64,000 bases of DNA from IMG/VR virus record IMGVR_UViG_3300043446_004437, positions 62,001 to 126,000 of that record, one strand, 5' to 3'. The notes under the pieces were generated by a model. It was not told where the DNA came from. It did no database searches and saw only the letters and a list, made by a program, of their open reading frames with translations. Each line of letters starts with the position of its first letter. The first letter of the stretch is position 1. Both the position numbers and the translations under genes were made by a program. This document shows positions 7,076 through 32,479 of the stretch, in pieces.

Positions 7076-7148
7076 GCCCTGATAGCTCAGAGGACAGAGC
7101 AACGGACTTCTAATCCGCAGGTCGTAGGTTCGACTCCTACTCAGGGCG
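7076..7148 (+). tRNA. trnR: tRNA-Arg(TCT)
   Basis: GCCCTGA/TCAGGGC acceptor, loop CTTCTAA, GGTTCGACTCC T-arm. Confidence 0.95.
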
Positions 7149-7211
7149 CTCAAATAAAAACAAAACAGTGACCAACCCAGCAATAAAAATAAACTTAATC
7201 GAGGTATAGAC

Positions 7212-8474: not shown

Positions 8475-8653
8475 CTCAAAAATGTTGGACACCTAAATTT
8501 ATACACCTTTGGTGTTCGCGCATACATAATATATATATTTTTTGTAATGTTGATTTTCTCAAAATTAAGTGTTATACTATTTTTTCACTAAAAATAACAT
8601 ATTATATATATAACTTTATACACCTTTCACAACACAAAAAAGGACATATTATC

Positions 8654-8857
8654 ATGGCAAAACCTTCAAAAACTCCACTCATTCAAGAATTCATCGCAGC
8701 CAACAATGGCAAGATTTATTCAACAAAAGAGATGTGCACAGAGATCGGCGTCAGCCTTCCAACACTTCTCGCATTCATCAAAAACAATCCTGAGTCATTT
8801 GCCCAACAGGCATATGGAGTTTACAAGATTGAAGTAAACGCACAAGCAACATACTAA
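8654..8857 (+). CDS. small winged-HTH protein
   Basis: YSTKEMCTEIGVSLPTLLAFIK; TTGATT...TATACT promoter-like element upstream (about 8551-8579). Confidence 0.7.
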   Translation: MAKPSKTPLIQEFIAANNGKIYSTKEMCTEIGVSLPTLLAFIKNNPESFAQQAYGVYKIEVNAQATY

Positions 8858-8917
8858 AACATATATAAAAATAAAGAAAGAAACTTAAGTTTTAATCTTT
8901 ATACAGGTACTATTCAA

Positions 8918-9164
8918 CTATCGCCTAACAAGCGATAGCGCAGGTAAGTTTAGACTTACCATCCTCTAACAAAGGATATGTATTGAAGACATACTTGTTA
9001 CACCACCATATATGTGATAAACTAATACCAATGCCCGTAACCAGCGGGCAGGGGAATAATCCCTAACGTAACAGAGAAATACTGTGAAGTCGGAGATGGC
9101 TAACCTTGCCACTGTGACGGGCATTTCGTATATGTCCGCACATCTTCGGTTTCGCAACCTGCGC
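8918..9164 (+). ncRNA. candidate structured RNA or leader upstream of the lysozyme-like gene
   Basis: At least 7 hairpins, long-range gcgcaggt/acctgcgc pairing, recurrent TAAC loops. Confidence 0.55.
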
Positions 9165-9223
9165 CGTACTAATGGCTTCTTCAGTTAGAAGTCAGACAAA
9201 GACGAAAAGGAGCGAACACGGAA

Positions 9224-9799
9224 ATGCAGCAAAACCATAAAAACTCTATATTATCAAGCATACTAGTTGCAATATTCTTATCATCTGGCATTGGCGCTTT
9301 ATTGGCCCAGCCAGTAGAGGAACCTCCCAGTACCCTTTGGGTACAACAAGCACCTGACCTACTTGATATTAGAGATAAAACTGAACCCATTGCGTTCAAA
9401 CATGGAGATATATCCTGGCTTCCACAATTAGCCGAACAGGCTGGTTGGCCACGTAAAACGTGGAAGAAGCTAGGTACAATTATTCTCCGTGAATCTGGTG
9501 GATGCCCCAACCGAGTTGGTGGATCTATAGTTGATGCTAATTGCAACATCACAGGACATACTGGTGCAACCAATAAGTCCGATTCAGGATTGTTGCAAAT
9601 CAATGGCGTCAACTGGGATCCTAAAAGATCAGGTAGACAAATACTGTGTGCAGATTATAAAATTTGTACACAAGAACAGCTACTTGATCCATTAACCAAC
9701 CTTAAAGCTGGATACATACTGTATCAAAAAGCTGGTTGGGATCCTTGGGACCCATGTGCATGGGGACCACAATATGCACACAAATGTAATGATTCTTAA
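9224..9799 (+). CDS. secreted lytic transglycosylase / lysozyme-like protein
   Basis: Signal peptide, RESGG catalytic Glu motif, DSGLLQIN motif, GW.PW C-terminus. Confidence 0.85.
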   Translation: MQQNHKNSILSSILVAIFLSSGIGALLAQPVEEPPSTLWVQQAPDLLDIRDKTEPIAFKHGDISWLPQLAEQAGWPRKTWKKLGTIILRESGGCPNRVGGSIVDANCNITGHTGATNKSDSGLLQINGVNWDPKRSGRQILCADYKICTQEQLLDPLTNLKAGYILYQKAGWDPWDPCAWGPQYAHKCNDS

Positions 9800-9822
9800 A
9801 TAATTAATTATTTAATTATGTA

Positions 9823-9856
9823 GGAATAAGACGGGGGGCCTTGTGCCCCCCTTTTT
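9823..9856 (+). promoter_or_regulatory. GGAATAAGACGG motif overlapping a GGGGGGC-CTTGT-GCCCCCC-T6 terminator
   Basis: Motif variant directly upstream of the putative RNAP gene. Confidence 0.5.
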
Positions 9857-9923
9857 AATTAACACAAAACACACTTTTTTTTGCTAACCCAAAAGTATAG
9901 CAAAAACTAAACCAGAAGGGGAT

Positions 9924-16018: not shown

Positions 16019-16105
16019 GCCCAGGTGGCGGAATTGGTAGACGCAAGGGGCTTAAACCCCCTCGCTATGTGAAATAGCGTACGGGTTCGATTCCCGTCTT
16101 GGGCA
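16019..16105 (+). tRNA. trnL: tRNA-Leu(TAA)
   Basis: GCCCAGG/CTTGGGC acceptor, AGGGG-CTTAAAC-CCCCT arm, long variable arm. Confidence 0.95.
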
Positions 16106-16122
16106 CAATACAAAGGATTTTT

Positions 16123-17568
16123 ATGCGGAATAAAAATTTTGTATACAAGTTTCTGTTATCAGCAACTCTGTTGTCAGCATTACTTGTTAACACAAAAAAT
16201 ACTACAGTTCTAGCTGGAGATGTTGCACCTGCAACTACTACAGTAAAGTTCTACAGAAAGACAACTAATGTTGTTCTTCCAGCTTTAGGAACTGTTGGAC
16301 CAAAAATTGGTATTGATACAGCATACAACAATAACTATCGAGGCCAAGACACTTACATTGTTTTGTTAGATACTGGCATAGAATCATCTCATCCATTTTT
16401 TGGTGGAAGAGTTGCACTTGAAGCATGCTTTACCGCAAGATGCCCTAATGGACAGACTTCTATGGTTGGACCAGGAGCTGCTGCACCTGTTCACTGGCAT
16501 GGTACTCATACTGCAGGAATTGCAGCTGGTGCTAATTCTTCTATTCGTGGAATTGCACCCAGTGCAAAAATTATTGCAGTCAACGTATTTGCATTAGACG
16601 GTTCCGCATCAGATGCCGATTTAATTAGAGCATTACAATGGGTTGATTCAATATCTAACGATTATAATATTGTTGCAGTCAACATGTCTTTAGGCACACC
16701 TGGAACATTTAGATCATCATGCAATTCTTATATTCCTGATCTTACTGCAATTATCTCAACGCTAAAGTCCAAAAATATTGCAACCGTTGTATCTGCTGGC
16801 AACGAAGGCCAAGTTGGCATGAGTTCACCAGCATGTATTACAGATACTGTCAGTGTTGCAGCAACATACTTTTTGGCCGATGGTAGTGACAGAGTTACAA
16901 GCTTTAGTAACGTAAATGAATTGACAGATTTATCTGCTCCAGGATACAACATTGTATCTTCTAAACTCATGGGCTCATATGGTTCCTCTTCAGGAACTTC
17001 AATGTCTGCCCCAATGGTTGCTGGAGCTTTTGCAGTCTATCGTTCTAAGTTTGGCTCACAGCCAGTTGATAAAGTTGTTTCTGATTTTCAATCTACCGGC
17101 ATAAATGCTAAAGATGATTATAGTGGAATTGTTACAAAAAGAATAGATTTTAAATCTATGTTTGCTGGCGGTGGTACAACACCAACACCAACTACCACAA
17201 TTCCAGTCACAACAACAACTGTACCTGGTTCAACAACAACCACTACCGTTCCTTCTGATGAAGATGACGAATCAGAAGATTATTTGAATATTCCTTATAT
17301 TATATCATTAAAGAAATATTCAACAAGATTGTCATATATCCAACTTGATTTTACTTATCGATACACTAACATACCTGTATCTAAATTTATTTTAAGATGC
17401 AGATATACAGATGGTAAAATAGTTGATAAGACAATACCCAACAGAAATAGAACAACTAATTTTTATTTAGTTTCTATTTCTTCTGTTAATATTCGCTCAT
17501 GTAGAATGGCCGCTGTTTCCACTTCTGAAACAATAGGTACATTTTCAAAATATATATTGGTAAAATAA
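16123..17568 (+). CDS. secreted S8 (subtilisin-like) serine peptidase with Thr-rich linker
   Basis: LLDTG, HGTHTAG and GTSMSAP catalytic triad; signal peptide. Confidence 0.95.
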   Translation: MRNKNFVYKFLLSATLLSALLVNTKNTTVLAGDVAPATTTVKFYRKTTNVVLPALGTVGPKIGIDTAYNNNYRGQDTYIVLLDTGIESSHPFFGGRVALEACFTARCPNGQTSMVGPGAAAPVHWHGTHTAGIAAGANSSIRGIAPSAKIIAVNVFALDGSASDADLIRALQWVDSISNDYNIVAVNMSLGTPGTFRSSCNSYIPDLTAIISTLKSKNIATVVSAGNEGQVGMSSPACITDTVSVAATYFLADGSDRVTSFSNVNELTDLSAPGYNIVSSKLMGSYGSSSGTSMSAPMVAGAFAVYRSKFGSQPVDKVVSDFQSTGINAKDDYSGIVTKRIDFKSMFAGGGTTPTPTTTIPVTTTTVPGSTTTTTVPSDEDDESEDYLNIPYIISLKKYSTRLSYIQLDFTYRYTNIPVSKFILRCRYTDGKIVDKTIPNRNRTTNFYLVSISSVNIRSCRMAAVSTSETIGTFSKYILVK

Positions 17569-18837: not shown

Positions 18838-18910
18838 TGGCGAGTAGCTCAGTTGGCAGAGCAAGGGACTGTTAATCCCTGGGTCGCAGGTTCGAGCCCT
18901 GCCTCGCCAG
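18838..18910 (+). tRNA. trnN: tRNA-Asn(GTT)
   Basis: TGGCGAG/CTCGCCA acceptor, loop CTGTTAA. Confidence 0.95.
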
Positions 18911-19079
18911 CTATGAAAAATTTTATTTATACTTCAATATTGTTTCCAGGTTCTTTTGAACCTGATCTACGCCCTATGATTATTCTTGTAGTTATTATGA
19001 TATCTTCCATATATTATGTTATTAAAAAAAATTGGAATGATATTAAAGACGATTTTAATTCCGATTGGGAATGATTTAA

Positions 19080-19152
19080 GCGCCTTTAGCTCAGCCGGTA
19101 GAGCACCGGACTTTTAATCCGTTGGTCCTGGGTTCGACCCCCAGAGGGCGCA
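19080..19152 (+). tRNA. trnK: tRNA-Lys(TTT)
   Basis: GCGCCTT/AGGGCGC acceptor, loop CTTTTAA. Confidence 0.95.
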
Positions 19153-19219
19153 CTGGATATAAGAAATAAAAACATACAGTGATATGTATTTCTAGTCCAA
19201 TTTTTAACAAAGGAAAAAA

Positions 19220-21998: not shown

Positions 21999-22071
21999 GG
22001 GCCGTTAGCTCAGCGGTTAGAGCAGGGCACTCATAATGCCTTGGCCGTAGGTTCGATCCCTACACGGCCCA
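21999..22071 (+). tRNA. tRNA-Ile2 or Met (CAT)
   Basis: GGGCCGT/ACGGCCC acceptor, loop CTCATAA; identity ambiguous. Confidence 0.9.
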
Positions 22072-22073
22072 CT

Positions 22074-23539: not shown

Positions 23540-23611
23540 GCCCAGTTAGCACAGTGGTAGTGCATCCGCCTTGTAAGCGGAAGGTCCTCAGTTCAATCCT
23601 GAGACTGGGCT
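23540..23611 (+). tRNA. trnT: tRNA-Thr(TGT)
   Basis: GCCCAGT/ACTGGGC acceptor, loop CTTGTAA. Confidence 0.95.
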
Positions 23612-23613
23612 CT

Positions 23614-28013: not shown

Positions 28014-29744
28014 ATGCAAGAAGAAGAAGTGCAGCCTCAAGTAACCCTTGATCAGCTTCAATATTTTTGGATGCCGTCAGGCGTTCCATGTTTTATTGCT
28101 GACAGGGATACAATTTGTGATATTGTTGAAGACATTGGCTTTAACATATATTATCTTTTGGCCAACAAAAAGACAGTGAAAACAATTCAGCAGCCTGCAA
28201 ATAACAACAAAGTTGGTTACACCACCACAACCCAGCCTGTGCAGGTTGCTACTTACAATTCTTCATTATTTAAGGTTGTGAATAATTTTGTTGGTAGGGT
28301 AATTAAACCATCTGATGATGAATTGCCAGCAGAGTTTTATGTTGCAGAAGAGTGTTGTGAATACAACATGCCTGAATTGCCTTACGTTCTTGTTGAAAAG
28401 ATGGATCAATTCTTTAGACTTGTTTATTCTCAGCACGGCACGGAGTCAATTGTTCTTCTTACTTACGATACAGAAAAACAGGGATCTGATGGTTGGGGTG
28501 TTTTAGTTCCTGATCAGGTAAATACTCCTGCTCACTGCAAATACGATGCGGACAGCATCGCTGCAATCAAACCAGAAAATGTTATGATTGTTGGTTCTGT
28601 TCATAGTCATCCAGAAATGTCTGCGTATGCTTCTGGTACCGACCACGCAGATCAAGCAGATTTTGATGGTCTTCACATCACCTATGGTTGGCAGAAGAGC
28701 GTCAACAATGGCGCCACTCAGTACCACATAGAACTTCAGATGTCTGGATCTTCTTATACCTTGAAACCTGAAGATGTTTTTGAGAATTTTTATATTCAAA
28801 AAGAACCTGATTCTGAAGTTGTAGAATGGTCTACTAAAGTAAAAAAAGCACACCCCCCTATAGCGGGGGGAGTCAGCACGTCGGCACCAGCGCAGGTTCC
28901 AGCGCCGTACAACCAGTCTCATCGGGCTCAACAACCGTATCAAAACTCGACGCAACATACGGCGGCTGGGGAGCCTACGATTGGTAAAAGACTTTTAACC
29001 AAACACTGGAACGACATGGTTGCCGATCTTGGTGACAATGCCATTGTTATTGTTGAAGCAGACCCCCAAATAGCTTATGCTTCAATATGTCCTGCTTGCG
29101 ATTACGATCTTGATACTCAAGATTTTAGAGCAGGATATTGTGCTTGTTGCGATGTTCCAGTTGTGTTAAACAGTCATAGTATTTTTCAAATAGCTTCGAT
29201 ATACAACAGATATTGTCTTGAGAGATCTTTAGATCCAACTCAAATGGTTCCATATTTGTATGGTGAAAACGAAAAGTTTGAACACTTTTTGATGAAACTA
29301 AATATTGAACAAGAAATACACGATATACACAAATATAATTATGGCATAGATGACGATGAAGATGTTCCATTAAGTTTAATAGAATCTTCTGATAATTATG
29401 ATTATTATCACAGTCTAAACGATAATGATTATGATGGAACAAAAACCATATGTTGCAATACACCTATGGAAAATTACATTAATAACTGTAATTGTCTTGT
29501 TCCAATTCTTTATGAAGATTTAAGTGCATTTGAATCGGCAGTTGAAACTATTGAGCTTTATGACACTAATTCTTCTTGTATATATTGCGCTCATTATTAT
29601 ACTCCTGCATGTCCTGCATATCGTTATTTATTAACTCAATATGTTACAAATAAATACGGTTTTGATCTTGAAACCCAAAGAAACGGCATAATACCGTGCA
29701 CTCATTATGAGTCAATGTATGCAGATACATTAGAAAAGGAATAA
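28014..29744 (+). CDS. JAB/MPN+ metallo-isopeptidase with Cys-rich C-terminal extension
   Basis: TESIVLL Glu and HSHPEMSAYASGTD (HxH-x7-S-x2-D). Confidence 0.9.
   Translation: MQEEEVQPQVTLDQLQYFWMPSGVPCFIADRDTICDIVEDIGFNIYYLLANKKTVKTIQQPANNNKVGYTTTTQPVQVATYNSSLFKVVNNFVGRVIKPSDDELPAEFYVAEECCEYNMPELPYVLVEKMDQFFRLVYSQHGTESIVLLTYDTEKQGSDGWGVLVPDQVNTPAHCKYDADSIAAIKPENVMIVGSVHSHPEMSAYASGTDHADQADFDGLHITYGWQKSVNNGATQYHIELQMSGSSYTLKPEDVFENFYIQKEPDSEVVEWSTKVKKAHPPIAGGVSTSAPAQVPAPYNQSHRAQQPYQNSTQHTAAGEPTIGKRLLTKHWNDMVADLGDNAIVIVEADPQIAYASICPACDYDLDTQDFRAGYCACCDVPVVLNSHSIFQIASIYNRYCLERSLDPTQMVPYLYGENEKFEHFLMKLNIEQEIHDIHKYNYGIDDDEDVPLSLIESSDNYDYYHSLNDNDYDGTKTICCNTPMENYINNCNCLVPILYEDLSAFESAVETIELYDTNSSCIYCAHYYTPACPAYRYLLTQYVTNKYGFDLETQRNGIIPCTHYESMYADTLEKE
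28841..28870 (+). promoter_or_regulatory. putative -1 programmed ribosomal frameshift signal
   Basis: A AAA AAA heptamer in frame, 5-nt spacer, CCCCCC-TATAGC-GGGGGG hairpin. Confidence 0.75.
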
Positions 29745-29746
29745 TT

Positions 29747-30505
29747 ATGAACCCTAAACGTTTTGTTGTTATAGGAGCTGGTGGCGTAGGCACATGGCTT
29801 ATTTCAGGTTTAGTAAGATTGCTTGAATGGAAAGCTCCAGGTTCAGGTTTGATAATTGTTGACGGCGACAATTATGAACAAAAGAACAAAGAGCGTCAAG
29901 AGTTTACAAAAATTGGCAATAAAGCTGTTGTTAAAGCTCATGAACTTACACCTAGTTTTCCAAAAACAACTATTATTCCTGTACCCAAATGGGTTGTAGG
30001 AGACGACTTTAAAGGAGTTACGACAGATGAAGATTCTCCAAAAATTAAAGCATCAGCTTTATTATCTGAAGGAGATGTGGTCTTTGCGGTTGTCGATAAT
30101 TTTGCTGCGCGCAAGATTATTTTTGATGCGGCGTCGCGGTTAGACAACATTGATGTATTTACTGGTGGCAACGACGATGCTTTATTTGGTTCAATATATC
30201 ATTATCAAAAAAGAGATGGCGTTGCTATAACAGAACATCCAGCAGTGTTTCACCCCGAATATGATAACGCACCAGACAAAAATCCTGGTGAATTATCATG
30301 TCAAGAAAGATCTGAAATAGAAGGTGGAACACAGTTACTTGCCACTAATATGGCAGTTGCTGCATTTATTCTTGGTAGAGTACAAAAGACAATTGTGCTA
30401 GACCAAAGCCCCGAAGAAACAGAGATATATTTTGATTTAGGTATCGGTAAATCCGAACCATATAACAGAATGGTATCTTATGTTTCAGAACCTGTTCAAG
30501 TATAA
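29747..30505 (+). CDS. ThiF/E1-like activating enzyme
   Basis: IGAGGVG, VDGD..E.KN..RQ, NKA, VDNFAAR, candidate catalytic Cys in ELSCQER. Confidence 0.92.
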   Translation: MNPKRFVVIGAGGVGTWLISGLVRLLEWKAPGSGLIIVDGDNYEQKNKERQEFTKIGNKAVVKAHELTPSFPKTTIIPVPKWVVGDDFKGVTTDEDSPKIKASALLSEGDVVFAVVDNFAARKIIFDAASRLDNIDVFTGGNDDALFGSIYHYQKRDGVAITEHPAVFHPEYDNAPDKNPGELSCQERSEIEGGTQLLATNMAVAAFILGRVQKTIVLDQSPEETEIYFDLGIGKSEPYNRMVSYVSEPVQV

Positions 30506-30523
30506 ATAAAATAAGGAGCAATC

Positions 30524-30775
30524 ATGGAAAACAATATGTCAAACGCTTCCGCATCTCAGCCAACTGGTATGGCAAATTTGAGGTTTGGTGTTTACAACCA
30601 GCCTACAAATGTTGCTGGAAAATCTGTTCAGCAAGCGCGCGAACAGTTTTCTAAAATTTGGGGTATCCCAAATGACGCAGTTGCTTACAAGGGCAAGGAC
30701 AAGCTCGACGAGAATTACGTTATTCAGCCAGGTGACAACGTAGAATTCCACCGTCGTGCCGGCGAGAAGGGCTGA
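30524..30775 (+). CDS. ubiquitin-like (beta-grasp) protein ending RRAGEKG
   Basis: 83 aa, C-terminal Gly, VIQPGDNVEF strand, directly after E1, strong RBS and C-ending codons. Confidence 0.8.
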   Translation: MENNMSNASASQPTGMANLRFGVYNQPTNVAGKSVQQAREQFSKIWGIPNDAVAYKGKDKLDENYVIQPGDNVEFHRRAGEKG

Positions 30776-30874: not shown

Positions 30875-32479
30875 ATGTTATTTGATGAAATAAAACTTGG
30901 TTATCCATCTTTATGGCTTAAAACCACAGAATATTCAAGAGCCGCAGAAAGTTTAGTTTCTTATGATTTTAGAGACTTTTATACAATAAATTTTGAGTCT
31001 GGCTTTTCTCAGTATGTTGGTGGTGCATGGAAAACAATTCTTATAGAATCTATAAATCCAGAAAATGGAGAAACAATCCATCAATCTACATTTGATCCTT
31101 CTGTATCGTTAAATTATTTACTTAATCTTAAATCAGATAAGCCAGTTACTTATTTGCTACCAATTTTAGGCAAACCTGATTCTGTTCTTCTTCCATACAT
31201 TTCTTTTGTTGCTGCTTTAAATGATAATTACAGAAAGAACTTTTGGCTTGATAATATTGAAGCAACATCGCTTCAAGTAGTATTTATATCTTCTGCCGAT
31301 GCTCCAGAAGAATATTTGCATATGTTTAAAACTGTTCAGTTTTCTTATCCTAATTCAGAAGAACTTTTTACAGTAGTTAATCATATCGATACTTCTTCTG
31401 CTGGAAGATTTGTTGATCAAAATGAAATCAAAGATATTGTTCGTTCTGGCTTAGGTCTTACAGAAGATCGTTTTGTTGATCTTTGTTTACGTTCTATTGT
31501 CAACAACAATAAGATTGATAGCAAATATGTTTATGATCAAAAGATGGCTCATATTAAAGAAGCTGGTATTTTGGAGATTATTAAACCTAAAATATCTTTT
31601 GATAATATTGGTGGCTTAGATAATATTAAAGATATTATTCAAAGAACAAAACTATTGTGGGCTAACCGGGAACAAGCAAAATCTTTTGGCGTTGTTCCGA
31701 TTAGAAGAGTTCTTATGGTGGGCGTTCCCGGCACCGGCAAGTCTGCTATTTGTCAAGCAACTGCGAAAGAACTTGGCCTTGACTTGGCCCGTACTGGCAT
31801 TAGCCAAGTTATGAACTCTTTTGTCGGCAAATCAGAAGCAAACATGAGAGCTGTTTTTGATCAGATTAAAATGATGACTCCGCTTTGTGTTTGGATCGAC
31901 GAGTTTGGTCGCGATCTTTCAGGTGGCTCTAGCAGTTCTCATGTTGACGCAGGCACTACTGATCGTGTTCACGGTGAATTTTTGACAGGATTGCAGGAAC
32001 TTCCAGAAGATACTTTCCTTATGTGTGCCGCAAACCAGCTAGATAATCTTCGTCCAGAAATGCTTCGTGCAGATCGTTTCGACAAGATAGTCTTTGTTGG
32101 TTTGCCTTCACATCAAGAAAGAAAAGATATCTTTAAAATTATTCTTAAAGATATTGAAACTGATCACATCTTTGATTACGATGCACTTGCGGAAAAAGCA
32201 CAGTACTTTACTGGCGCAGAAATTACCGCACTAATCAAAGAAGTTAAATTCTTTGTTGTTTCTTCACAACTTCGACCAATCAATACTCAAGATATTATAT
32301 CTTATATTCCTACTGTAAGAAATATTCTCTGGAACAAAAACAGAGATATGATTAAAAACATGTATCAGTATGCTCTTGAACAATGGGATTGGGCTTCTAC
32401 TGAACAGCTACAAGATGCTAAAATGATTATACACGGTACGAGAAGCAACTCTGATAAAGACTTAGCTTGGAAAATATAA
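30875..32479 (+). CDS. classical-clade AAA+ ATPase (Ycf46-like, degenerate N-terminal module)
   Basis: GVPGTGKS, WIDE, AANQLDNLRPEMLRADRFD second region of homology. Confidence 0.92.
   Translation: MLFDEIKLGYPSLWLKTTEYSRAAESLVSYDFRDFYTINFESGFSQYVGGAWKTILIESINPENGETIHQSTFDPSVSLNYLLNLKSDKPVTYLLPILGKPDSVLLPYISFVAALNDNYRKNFWLDNIEATSLQVVFISSADAPEEYLHMFKTVQFSYPNSEELFTVVNHIDTSSAGRFVDQNEIKDIVRSGLGLTEDRFVDLCLRSIVNNNKIDSKYVYDQKMAHIKEAGILEIIKPKISFDNIGGLDNIKDIIQRTKLLWANREQAKSFGVVPIRRVLMVGVPGTGKSAICQATAKELGLDLARTGISQVMNSFVGKSEANMRAVFDQIKMMTPLCVWIDEFGRDLSGGSSSSHVDAGTTDRVHGEFLTGLQELPEDTFLMCAANQLDNLRPEMLRADRFDKIVFVGLPSHQERKDIFKIILKDIETDHIFDYDALAEKAQYFTGAEITALIKEVKFFVVSSQLRPINTQDIISYIPTVRNILWNKNRDMIKNMYQYALEQWDWASTEQLQDAKMIIHGTRSNSDKDLAWKI

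What the first reader, a model, noticed from the sequence alone, without database searches (positions are those of the whole stretch)
8918..9164. Ornate 250-nt RNA candidate with repeated TAAC loops upstream of a lysozyme-like gene
Seen: hairpins ctatcgc-CTAACAA-gcgatag, ggtaagt-ttag-acttacc, atcct-CTAACAA-aggat, tgcccg-TAACCAG-cgggca, agggga-ataa-tcccct, acag-agaaata-ctgt and tggc-TAACCTT-gcca. Long-range pairs gcgcaggt/acctgcgc and atgcccgt/acgggcat compete with the local hairpins. Inference: either a riboswitch-like leader controlling the cell-wall enzyme (alternative folds) or a protein-sponge RNA presenting UAAC loops, in the way CsrB presents GGA.
Basis: partly seen in the sequence, partly recalled or inferred. 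Interest (0 to 1): 0.6.

Follow-up and report, generated by a model that had tools for sequence, protein, structure and literature searches.

The report
Structured leader RNA of phage cell-wall enzyme
A roughly 195-base, tightly folded and strongly conserved RNA sits in front of a cell-wall-cutting enzyme gene in a group of uncultured freshwater giant phages; it matches no catalogued RNA family and probably switches translation of that enzyme on and off.

Summary
The conserved unit is shifted, though: it is the 5' leader of the lytic-transglycosylase gene, window ~9030-9223, behind a conserved extended -10 promoter (8995-9023). I found 54 distinct homologues in viral and metagenome contigs. 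Each lies directly upstream of a secreted muralytic gene (SLT-only, or Rpf-like+SLT), although flanking gene order differs. The leader DNA is 91-93% identical where the protein is 63-66%. Seven helices are supported: 91% of cells paired versus 30-48% in slid controls, with heavy compensatory change in H7, H6, clade-B H3 and the H1 closing pair. No Rfam family matches, including c-di-AMP and purine riboswitches. The 3' strand of the near-invariant 12-bp helix H4, plus the following linker, can instead pair with the Shine-Dalgarno/start region. The two folds are nearly isoenergetic, so a bistable translational leader is the best model; its trigger is unknown. The upstream hairpins (8918-8977) are clade-specific. 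GCGCAGGT/ACCTGCGC is conserved in clade A and two clade C members, and probably acts only in longer transcripts. UAAC loops are missing from one whole clade, so the sponge idea fails. This is a new RNA family of a known kind.

The parts
8906..8914 (+). GGTACTATT box (-10-like TACTAT). Probable upstream promoter P1; its transcripts would start near 8920, at the foot of the first hairpin.
   Evidence: G(G/T)TACTAT is kept 110-230 nt upstream of H1 in clades A, A', B and in L461/L459 of clade C. It is not enriched genome-wide. Promoter function is inferred.
8918..8977 (+). Three clade-specific hairpins: 8918-8938, 8943-8960 and 8961-8977. Two carry CUAACAA loops. They are present only in long (P1) transcripts.
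   Evidence: The stems are kept, with compensatory or G.U changes, in the window subclade. The loop sequences are not kept. Other clades have different hairpins here.
8938..8945 (+). GCGCAGGT, the 5' partner of the long-range helix with ACCTGCGC (9157-9164). It overlaps the ends of hairpins 1 and 2.
   Evidence: The duplex with the linker is -17.5 kcal/mol against -9.0 +/- 2.4 for shuffles (p < 0.004). Other clade A subclades keep complementarity in other registers. GCGCAGGA is also kept in L461/L459. It is absent from clades A' and B.
8995..9023 (+). Probable sigma-70-type promoter P2: -35 TTGTTA (8995-9000), 17-nt spacer, TG (9015-9016), -10 TAAACT (9018-9023). Predicted start about 9030-9031.
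   Evidence: An extended -10 (TGnTAnAAT/TATACT) is conserved in all clades just 5' of H1, at a variable distance: 4-8 nt in A/A'/C and about 25 nt in B. One metatranscriptome contig is adapter sequence joined directly to 9034. Not shown experimentally.
9032..9050 (+). H1: UGCCCGU/GCGGGCA hairpin with a variable loop.
   Evidence: Six pairs are invariant. The closing pair is U.G in 34, A-U in 8 and U-A in 2 members.
9051..9064 (+). H2: GGGGA/UCCCU hairpin, loop AUAA.
   Evidence: Kept in clades A, A' and C. Not formed in clade B.
9071..9085 (+). H3: ACAG/CUGU hairpin.
   Evidence: 4 bp in clades A/A'. Clade B has a 7-bp hairpin here, AGAUACU/AGUAUCU, with three compensatory pairs in L241 (AAAUGUU/AACAUUU) and one in L224.
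9086..9153 (+). Three-way junction. H4 is GAAGUCGGAGAU (9086-9097) with AUCUUCGGUUUC (9142-9153) and contains three G.U pairs. H5 is GGC/GCC (9098-9110). H6 is CGGGCAU/AUGUCCG (9118-9138) with loop UUCGUAU.
   Evidence: H4 is invariant in the first 7 loci, which were found through the protein alone. It is nearly invariant in 7 members found without using H4. H5 is present in all 47 members. In H6 one pair is G-C, G.U or A-U in 9 members each. The loop UCGU is kept in all but three aligned members. The G.U pairs point to the + strand.
9154..9172 (+). Linker GCAACCUGCGCCGUACUAA (the invariant CUAAUG lies at 9169-9174). It is the proposed anti-SD/anti-start element and the 3' partner of the long-range helix.
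   Evidence: Together with the H4 3' strand it pairs with ACGAAA...AGGAG...AUG at -12 to -17 kcal/mol in clades A, B and C, in different registers. CUAAUG is invariant in all 54 members.
9173..9194 (+). H7: 8-bp hairpin UGGCUUCU/AGAAGUCA.
   Evidence: Six of its 8 pairs show changes on both sides, and 97% of cells are paired.
9195..9226 (+). A-rich single strand containing the invariant ACGAAA (9202-9207), the Shine-Dalgarno sequence AAGGAG (9207-9212) and the start codon (9224-9226).
9224..9799 (+). Regulated gene: a 191-aa lytic transglycosylase. It has an N-terminal Ser/Gly/Ala-rich hydrophobic segment and the motifs RES, GLLQIN and AGY.
   Evidence: Pfam SLT_3 at E 2e-4, below the curated cut-off. 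Translation. Clade C orthologous position: Rpf-like PF06737 + SLT PF01464, both above their cut-offs.
9833..9860 (+). Intrinsic terminator GGGGGGCCTTGTGCCCCCC followed by TTTTT. It closes a one-gene transcription unit.

Best explanation
Window ~9030-9223 is the structured 5' untranslated leader of the mRNA for a phage lytic transglycosylase. It acts in cis on translation initiation through two mutually exclusive folds.

- Fold 1: GAAGUCGGAGAU pairs with AUCUUCGGUUUC (H4) and closes a three-way junction with H5 and H6. The A-rich ribosome-binding region after hairpin H7 is then free.
- Fold 2: the 3' strand of H4 and the following linker (CAUCUUCGGUUUCGCAACCUGCGCCGUA) pair with ACGAAA-AGGAG-GCGAA-CGGAA-AUG. 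This masks the Shine-Dalgarno sequence and the start codon.

In the window's clade the balance is probably set partly by which promoter made the transcript. Long transcripts from the upstream TACTAT box carry GCGCAGGU (8938-8945). This clamps the linker and favours the open fold. Short transcripts from the extended -10 promoter at 9018-9023 lack it and favour the masked fold. A trans factor acting on the near-invariant helices (protein, small molecule or temperature) may add to this; none is identified.

Shown: conservation, the helices, cis linkage to muralytic genes, the existence of the alternative complementarity, and absence from Rfam.
Inferred: both promoters, the direction of regulation and the trigger.
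For: Conservation and linkage:
- The upstream DNA is 91-93% identical in L034/L003, where the protein is 63-66% identical.
- There are 47 + 7 distinct homologues. Wherever downstream sequence is held, each lies immediately 5' of a secreted muralytic gene, although the 877-aa neighbour sits downstream, upstream or far away depending on the clade.
- In clade C the gene is a different architecture, Rpf-like + SLT.
- The element is single-copy in the 216-kb genome.

Structure:
- 90.7-90.9% of cells are paired versus 30-48% in slid controls.
- The covariation score is 0.235-0.256 versus 0.03-0.07 in slid controls.
- 0 of 500 shuffles reach the observed values.

Strand: conserved G.U pairs in H4, H1 and H6 would be A.C mismatches on the other strand.

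Alternative fold:
- The duplex between the H4 3' strand plus linker and the RBS region is -12 to -17 kcal/mol in clades A, B and C, with z = -1.5 to -3.2 where shuffles were run (A, B). The RBS side varies while complementarity is kept in new registers: AACC versus CAGACUGA in clade B, GAACACGGAAAUG versus GAAUACCAAAUG versus GAUACCAUG in A/C.
- Forbidding the 12-bp H4 costs only -1.5 to +4.9 kcal/mol, mostly 0-4.
- The real tail gives a lower cost than shuffled tails in 8 of 8 sequences; the fraction of shuffles at or below the observed value is 0-0.10.
- In 10 of 12 clade A members the long transcript has a higher predicted H4 probability and a freer SD than the short one.

Other support:
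- Metatranscriptome contigs cover the leader. One is sequencing adapter joined directly at 9034, close to the predicted start.
- Precedent: T4 lysozyme gene e is translated from one transcript class and masked by RNA structure in the other (PMC3014915).
Against: - No experiment or raw-read 5' mapping supports either promoter or either fold. The RNA-library evidence is contigs only, and DNA carry-over is not excluded.
- In clade A' the alternative duplex is weak: -8 kcal/mol, z about -0.7.
- The pairing registers differ between clades, so there is no strict column-by-column covariation for fold 2.
- H4 never shows a compensatory double change, so its pairing rests on invariance and thermodynamics.
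- Most homologues were retrieved with a pattern that fixed 21 bases of H4. Only 14 sequences are unbiased for it.
- A 12-bp helix would form co-transcriptionally before the RBS is made. Without a trigger the leader could simply stay open.
- The long-range clamp is absent from clades A' and B.
Confidence: 0.45

Rival explanations
1. A true riboswitch. The H4/H5/H6 three-way junction, possibly with H1-H3, binds a small molecule such as a cell-wall or nucleotide signal. Binding stabilises H4 and frees the RBS: a translational ON switch built like the Vibrio add adenine riboswitch.
For: - The architecture fits: P1-like helix, two hairpins with 7-nt loops, and the P1 3' strand doubling as an anti-RBS element.
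- The conserved hairpin loop UCGUA and the invariant single strands CUAAUG and ACGAAA could form a pocket or tertiary contacts.
- The gene context parallels c-di-AMP riboswitches upstream of rpf and cell-wall hydrolase genes (plus my own knowledge of that family).
Against: - Junction strand J5/6 is ACUGUGA in clades A/A' but unrelated in clade B (AAUCGUUA, AACGAAAAA and others).
- The H5 loop varies, while the helices are invariant. This is the reverse of the usual aptamer pattern.
- There is no match to any of 4227 Rfam models at E <= 10, nor to RF00379 or RF00167 searched alone.
- A 12-bp P1 needs no ligand to form.
Confidence: 0.17
2. A protein-binding translational operator. A phage or host protein recognises the invariant helices (GGGCA occurs in both H1 and H6; H4 has three fixed G.U pairs) and so times synthesis of a potentially lethal wall enzyme, as T4 RegA, gp32 and similar proteins act on their targets.
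For: - Sequence invariance of the paired strands H1 and H4 in all clades, including members found without using H4.
- Repeated GGGCA.
- Conserved G.U pairs are common protein or ion recognition sites (my own knowledge).
- A small helix-turn-helix-like ORF (8654-8857) is syntenic upstream in clade A and parts of C, and more weakly in some A'/B loci.
Against: - No candidate RNA-binding protein has been identified.
- The upstream ORF looks DNA-binding, and only at E 0.086.
- Invariance is equally explained by each strand having two pairing partners.
Confidence: 0.2
3. A constitutive leader: 5' hairpins that protect the mRNA from decay, plus an A/C-rich unstructured enhancer that loads ribosomes. 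No switching.
For: - In clades A, A' and C, H1 lies within a few bases of the predicted 5' end, like the ompA-type stabiliser.
- The region after H7 is A-rich and mostly unpaired in fold 1.
Against: - Stabilisers need structure, not 70+ invariant positions.
- In clade B about 20 unpaired bases precede H1.
- Conserved complementarity between the H4 3' strand and the RBS is unexplained.
- Related phages manage with short 70-100-nt leaders.
Confidence: 0.12
4. A trans-acting small RNA or protein sponge presenting UAAC loops.
For: - UAAC occurs 6 times against 1.4 expected in 8918-9164, mostly in loops.
- Short metatranscriptome contigs cover only the leader.
Against: - UAAC is at chance level in clade B. 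The CUAACAA loops are not kept even in the nearest relatives.
- There is no terminator before the gene.
- The element is always in cis to one gene class and single-copy.
Confidence: 0.04

Closest known systems
Phage T4 gene e (lysozyme) leader, and the similar soc, 49 and I-TevI leaders: transcript-specific masking of the ribosome-binding site
   Same: A phage wall-degrading enzyme is involved. There are two promoters in tandem. An upstream segment present only in the longer transcript changes whether the RBS is paired. Translation is thus tied to promoter use (PMC3014915).
   Different: In T4 a single hairpin masks the RBS in the long transcript. Here the predicted polarity is the reverse: the long transcript is open. 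The leader is a ~195-nt multi-helix RNA conserved far beyond what masking needs. The clamp is present only in clade A and two clade C members.
c-di-AMP riboswitch (ydaO-yuaA, RF00379)
   Same: It lies upstream of secreted peptidoglycan hydrolases, including Rpf-domain proteins (the family's gene context is from my own knowledge). It is a large multi-helix leader.
   Different: There is no match to the covariance model in the genome or the region. The sequence and architecture are unrelated.
Purine riboswitch (RF00167), especially the translational add adenine switch
   Same: A three-way junction in which the 3' strand of the closing helix doubles as an anti-RBS element, followed by a hairpin and the SD. 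From memory, the H6 stem and loop (CGGGCA..CGUA..UGUCCG) resemble P3 of the B. subtilis xpt aptamer.
   Different: The model does not hit the locus. There is no J1/2 strand, and H5 has only 3-4 bp. The junction is not conserved between clades.
Orphan cis-regulatory motifs upstream of cell-wall enzyme genes found by comparative genomics (for example lysM- and NLPC_P60-type motifs)
   Same: The same kind of object: a conserved structured leader with unknown trigger in front of a muralytic gene.
   Different: None of the Rfam models matches. This one is confined to a lineage of 170-270-kb freshwater phages.

Membership tests
Any Rfam 15 family | Score against the family covariance model at or above its gathering score | tested here: not met
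   In the window only 7 tRNAs reach a gathering score. In 8780-9300 the best matches are 13-18.5 bits, E 3-5.5, for unrelated families.
c-di-AMP riboswitch (RF00379) | Match to the ydaO-yuaA covariance model | tested here: not met
   No match at E <= 10 in the whole 216-kb genome.
c-di-AMP riboswitch (RF00379) | Location upstream of cell-wall metabolism or Rpf genes | tested here: met
   SLT-type gene in the window. Rpf-like + SLT in clade C. This feature is contextual only and does not establish membership.
Purine riboswitch (RF00167) | Match to the covariance model; conserved J1/2, J2/3 and J3/1 pocket | tested here: not met
   The only hit in the genome is elsewhere (18.5 bits, E 0.6). H4 runs directly into H5 with no J1/2, and J5/6 varies between clades.
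Transcript-specific RBS masking (T4 gene e type) | Two promoters giving transcripts that differ in a segment able to change RBS pairing | tested here: inconclusive
   Two conserved promoter-like elements and a significant long-range complement exist in clade A, and different SD accessibility is predicted. No transcript mapping is available.
CsrB/RsmZ-like protein sponge | Many copies of a short motif in loops, conserved among homologues | tested here: not met
   UAAC is enriched in clade A only and occurs 0-2 times in clade B. Loop sequences change while stems stay.
CsrB/RsmZ-like protein sponge | Independent transcription unit with its own terminator | tested here: not met
   There is no terminator between 8918 and the start codon. 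The terminator follows the gene at 9833-9851.
Metabolite riboswitch (generic) | Ligand-dependent structural change | not testable with these tools
   Needs in-line probing, ITC or reporter assays.

The most novel reading that the evidence does not exclude
The leader is a new class of ligand- or protein-responsive RNA switch by which large freshwater phages sense host state and time release of a peptidoglycan-cutting enzyme. Their hosts are possibly actinobacterial, judging by the Rpf-like domain. Such a switch would be a functional counterpart of the c-di-AMP riboswitch on rpf genes, with an unrelated fold.
Probability: 0.2. Interest if true: 0.8.

Novelty: new variant of a known kind. Interest (0 to 1): 0.55.

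Why it matters
Structured cis-regulatory RNAs are rarely described in phages, and almost nothing is known about gene control in uncultured freshwater jumbo phages. This leader has several notable properties:
- It is conserved more strongly than the protein it precedes.
- It follows muralytic genes of two different architectures through genome rearrangements.
- It has a built-in alternative fold over the ribosome-binding site.

It is therefore a concrete, testable case of RNA-level control of a wall-degrading enzyme, whose mistimed production would be costly to the phage. If a ligand or protein trigger exists, it would add a new switch class. It would also give a handle on how these phages read the state of their host. 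The covariance model built here (R1) can be used to annotate the family.

Tried and rejected
1. Rfam at gathering scores and at E <= 10, plus RF00167 and RF00379 alone, gave nothing at the locus.
2. blastn of the region, and tblastn of the SLT protein, against 50,697 phage records found no match. The helicase finds only distant (<40%) relatives in phages of Acidobacteria and Actinobacteria, so the host stays unknown.
3. The exact 14-mer scan and the loose CTAATG...ACGAAARKGARC scan of viral contigs returned almost only chance hits.
4. The genome-contig scan gave 67 hits, but only L425 is a real member. L425 is a 13-kb contig binned in a Cyclobacteriaceae MAG. Among the 37 loci searched with R1 only L425 matched; the one hit I read (L394) lies inside an ORF, and the rest (the Lentzea series and others, not searched with R1) look like chance or coding matches.
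5. The other SLT-encoding phage loci (L005-L018, L021-L033) have short, different leaders and do not match R1.
6. Long-range AUGCCCGU/ACGGGCAU was rejected as a conserved pair, because clade A' has GGACAU, which keeps H6 instead.
7. A loop-H6 UCGU:ACGA pseudoknot has 4-6 bp potential in most members, but there is no covariation. L214/L174/L425 and L466 change one side without compensation. It is left open and not claimed.
8. A leaderless upstream ORF starting at the AUG of H1: the AUG sits at the predicted start in many members. However, the peptide length is not conserved (3-23 codons), and in L181/L170 the -10 is only 4 nt away. Not adopted.
9. A minus-strand 63-aa ORF (8966-9157) and other coding readings were rejected, because 1- and 2-nt indels among homologues break every frame.
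10. The literature search for a described RNA upstream of phage lytic transglycosylases found nothing relevant.

The large protein searches were not needed. Read laying was given 1,301 letters.

Full report
**Setting.** The window is bases 62001-126000 of a 216-kb IMG/VR virus record rated complete. It carries seven scattered tRNA genes and phage-type genes such as a helicase. No cultured relative exists in the phage collection. The finding lies in the 366-nt gap between a 67-aa ORF (8654-8857) and a 191-aa ORF (9224-9799). A strong intrinsic terminator follows that gene at 9833-9851.

**The downstream gene.** The 191-aa protein has a Ser/Gly/Ala-rich N-terminal hydrophobic segment. It also has the RES, GLLQIN and AGY motifs of family-1 lytic transglycosylases. 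Pfam gives SLT_3 at E 2e-4, below the curated cut-off.

**Observation.** The one exception is a hairpin written with one c too many.
- The + strand of 8900-9190 folds at -92.6 kcal/mol against -66.6 +/- 5.1 for shuffles (z -5.1). The minus strand also folds well (z -4.4), as expected for any helix-rich DNA.
- TAAC occurs six times against 1.4 expected (p 0.0025).

**Homologues.**
- The SLT protein found 34 loci in viral contigs. In eight of them the upstream DNA matches the window. In L034 and L003 it is 91-93% identical over 364 nt, although the proteins are only 63-66% identical.
- The alignment of seven such loci showed that the best-conserved stretch is not 8918-9164. It runs from about 9010 to the start codon.
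- One metagenome scan, with a two-part pattern taken from the invariant helix, followed by nhmmer gave 47 distinct full-length members.
- A second viral scan used only H1 and CUAAUG, and so was blind to H4. It added seven distinct, more divergent members.
- The family falls into four clades: A (with the window), A', B and C.
- It is single-copy in the window's genome.
- It is absent from the other SLT-encoding phages, which have short 70-100-nt leaders.
- Among 185,579 species genomes, only a 13-kb phage-like contig binned in a Cyclobacteriaceae MAG carries it.

**Linkage.** Wherever the contig extends far enough, the element ends 5-15 nt before the start codon of a secreted muralytic gene.
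- The 877-aa neighbour lies downstream in clade A, upstream in A', and kilobases away in B. The RNA-gene pair has therefore been kept through rearrangements.
- In clade C the gene is not the 191-aa type. It is a 284-292-aa protein with an Rpf-like transglycosylase domain (PF06737, E 1e-9 to 3e-13) and an SLT domain (PF01464, E 1e-10 to 1e-11).
- The leader therefore tracks a function, peptidoglycan cleavage, rather than one protein sequence.

**Structure.** Seven helices fit all or most members:

| Helix | Window coordinates | Support |
|---|---|---|
| H1 | 9032-9050 | Six invariant pairs; the closing pair is U.G, A-U or U-A |
| H2 | 9051-9064 | Kept in clades A, A' and C |
| H3 | 9071-9085 | 4 bp in A/A'; in clade B replaced at the same site by a 7-bp hairpin with three compensatory pairs |
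| H4 | 9086-9097 with 9142-9153 | 12 bp including three G.U pairs |
| H5 | 9098-9110 | Present in all 47 members |
| H6 | 9118-9138 | One pair is G-C, G.U or A-U in nine members each; loop UCGUA conserved |
| H7 | 9173-9194 | Six of eight pairs change on both sides |

- On the model-based alignments, 90.7-90.9% of cells are standard pairs, against 30-48% when partners are slid by 1-3 columns.
- The covariation score is 0.235-0.256 against 0.03-0.07 in the slid controls.
- No shuffle of 500 reaches the observed values.
- RNAalifold independently recovers H1, H4 and H7.
- The conserved G.U pairs, the orientation of the flanking gene and the inclusion of its Shine-Dalgarno sequence put the RNA on the + strand.
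- One- and two-base indels among members exclude a coding reading.

**H4 is unusual.** Its sequence is invariant in the seven loci found through the protein alone. It is almost invariant in the seven members found without it: only the top pair is lost, one U.G becomes U-A, and two members each break another pair. It never shows a double compensatory change. H1 behaves the same way.

By contrast, the junction strand between H5 and H6 and the H5 loop differ completely between clades. Invariant helices with variable junctions are not what a small-molecule pocket usually looks like. They fit strands that each have more than one partner, or sequence-specific protein recognition.

**Alternative fold.** The 3' strand of H4 plus the following linker is complementary to the stretch from ACGAAA through the Shine-Dalgarno sequence to the start codon.
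- In the window this is 18 pairs in five blocks, -17.4 kcal/mol.
- Clades A, B and C all have such a duplex, at -12 to -17 kcal/mol. For A and B it sits 1.5-3.2 sd below shuffles.
- The invariant side stays fixed. The RBS side changes yet remains complementary in new registers: GUGAGCAACC versus GUGAGCAGACUGAUG in B; GCGAACACGGAAAUG, GCGAAUACCAAAUG and GCGAUACCAUGCGCA in A and C.
- Clade A' is weak (-8 kcal/mol).
- Forcing the H4 5' strand to be unpaired costs only -1.5 to +4.9 kcal/mol (mostly 0-4) across members, although a 12-bp helix is lost. In that state the SD is 57-86% paired.
- Shuffling the tail raises the cost in all eight representatives tested.
- The plain MFE of the short transcript is already the masked fold.

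This is the basis for the bistable-leader model. It is thermodynamic and comparative, not experimental.

**Promoters and the upstream part.**
- An extended -10 element (TGnTAAACT in the window; TGnTATAAT or TATACT in relatives) lies just 5' of H1 in every clade. A TTGTTA/TTACAA -35 sits 15-17 nt upstream of it in clade A.
- Its distance to H1 varies: 4-8 nt in A, A' and C, and about 25 nt in B. This argues for a promoter (P2) rather than part of the fold.
- The three hairpins 8918-8977 are kept only in the window's subclade. There the stems show compensatory or wobble changes, but the CUAACAA loops do not persist. Other clades have other hairpins at that place.

**The long-range pair GCGCAGGU/ACCUGCGC.**
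- It is highly non-random in the window (-17.5 versus -9.0 +/- 2.4 kcal/mol).
- Complementarity is kept in other registers in the L002, L228 and L194 subclades.
- The module 'TACTAT box, hairpin, GCGCAGGA' recurs about 230 nt upstream in L461/L459 of clade C.
- It is not detectable in clades A' or B.
- Its target is the linker, which is part of the anti-RBS strand. Partition-function folding predicts that long transcripts have more H4 and a freer SD than short ones in 10 of 12 clade A members; for example, SD unpaired is 0.86 against 0.19 in L228.
- The logic is that of T4 lysozyme gene e, where transcript class decides whether the RBS is masked (PMC3014915), but with the polarity reversed.

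**Transcription.** Six metatranscriptome runs hold 13-18% of the sampled words of 8600-9900, roughly what the conserved leader alone (about 15% of the stretch) would give. Four were laid.
- Contigs from relatives cover the leader in all four runs.
- One 217-nt contig (run X18) consists of 19 nt that I recognise as Illumina adapter, joined directly to 9034-9223. That is a fragment end 3-4 nt from the predicted P2 start.
- Another contig (X17) spans 8841-9223 and beyond, consistent with longer transcripts or with DNA carry-over.
- These are assembled contigs, so they show presence in RNA libraries. They do not show strand, ends or level.

**Known families.** No Rfam model matches. The c-di-AMP model finds nothing in the genome. 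The purine model hits only an unrelated place weakly, despite a remembered likeness of H6 to the xpt P3 hairpin. The element is therefore not a member of any catalogued family. In kind, it is a structured cis-regulatory mRNA leader.

**Verdict.** The riboswitch-like leader reading is partly supported: cis-acting, with alternative folds over the RBS, and no evidence yet for a ligand. The sponge reading is not supported.

My confidence that this is a functional cis-acting leader RNA of the muralytic gene is about 0.85. My confidence in the specific H4/anti-RBS switch is 0.45.

Noticed in passing
window 8654-8857 (+): A 67-aa ORF just upstream, with a weak excisionase/helix-turn-helix-like match (TIGR01764, E 0.086). 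It is syntenic with the leader in clade A (60-84% identity), in parts of clade C (30-56%) and more weakly in some A'/B loci (29-35%). It could be a regulator of the two promoters.
   Followed up: partly
window 8862-8872, and the same place in clade B loci (for example L019, L004): A conserved TATAAAAAT box lies right after the upstream ORF, 20-34 nt before the TACTAT box. It resembles T4-type late promoters (TATAAATA) and may be a third promoter-like element in this spacer.
   Followed up: no
L461:10516-11391, L465:9480-10349, L475:9295-10146: In clade C the leader precedes a secreted two-domain enzyme, Rpf-like PF06737 + SLT PF01464. To my knowledge Rpf domains are typical of Actinobacteria and their phages, which hints at the host group. 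The closest helicases are in phages of Acidobacteria and Actinobacteria.
   Followed up: partly
L425 (JBDNFI010000070.1, 13 kb): The only bacterial-genome hit is a phage-like contig binned into a Cyclobacteriaceae MAG. It is either a binning artefact or a conflicting host hint.
   Followed up: no
window 9031-9033 and the homologous position: The AUG at the foot of H1 coincides with the predicted P2 start in many members. The only two variants at its first base give GUG and UUG. A leaderless mini-ORF is conceivable, but its length is not conserved.
   Followed up: partly
window 7076-7149, 16019-16106, 18838-18911, 19080-19153, 21999-22072, 23540-23612, 43772-43847: Seven tRNA genes (Arg, Leu, Asn, Lys, Met, Thr, Gly) are scattered singly between protein genes rather than clustered.
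   Followed up: no
window 30376-30528 (+): A weak match to the leader model R1 (13.6 bits, E 0.068) in the gap before the AAA ATPase gene. Probably chance.
   Followed up: no
window 16099-17568, 28014-29744, 30875-32479: The window encodes a subtilase (PF00082, E 2e-35), a weak JAB-domain protein (below the curated cut-off) and an AAA+ ATPase (above the cut-off). Most large ORFs, including two of about 1,300 aa, have no family match.
   Followed up: no
Read-laying run X15 record 4 and run X16 record 10 (on window 9078-9174): Metatranscriptome contigs of 1.3 and 5.9 kb match only the H4-H6 core and have different flanks. One flank forms yet another compensating H7 (AUGAU...AUCAU). This indicates further family members not in the collections searched.
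   Followed up: no
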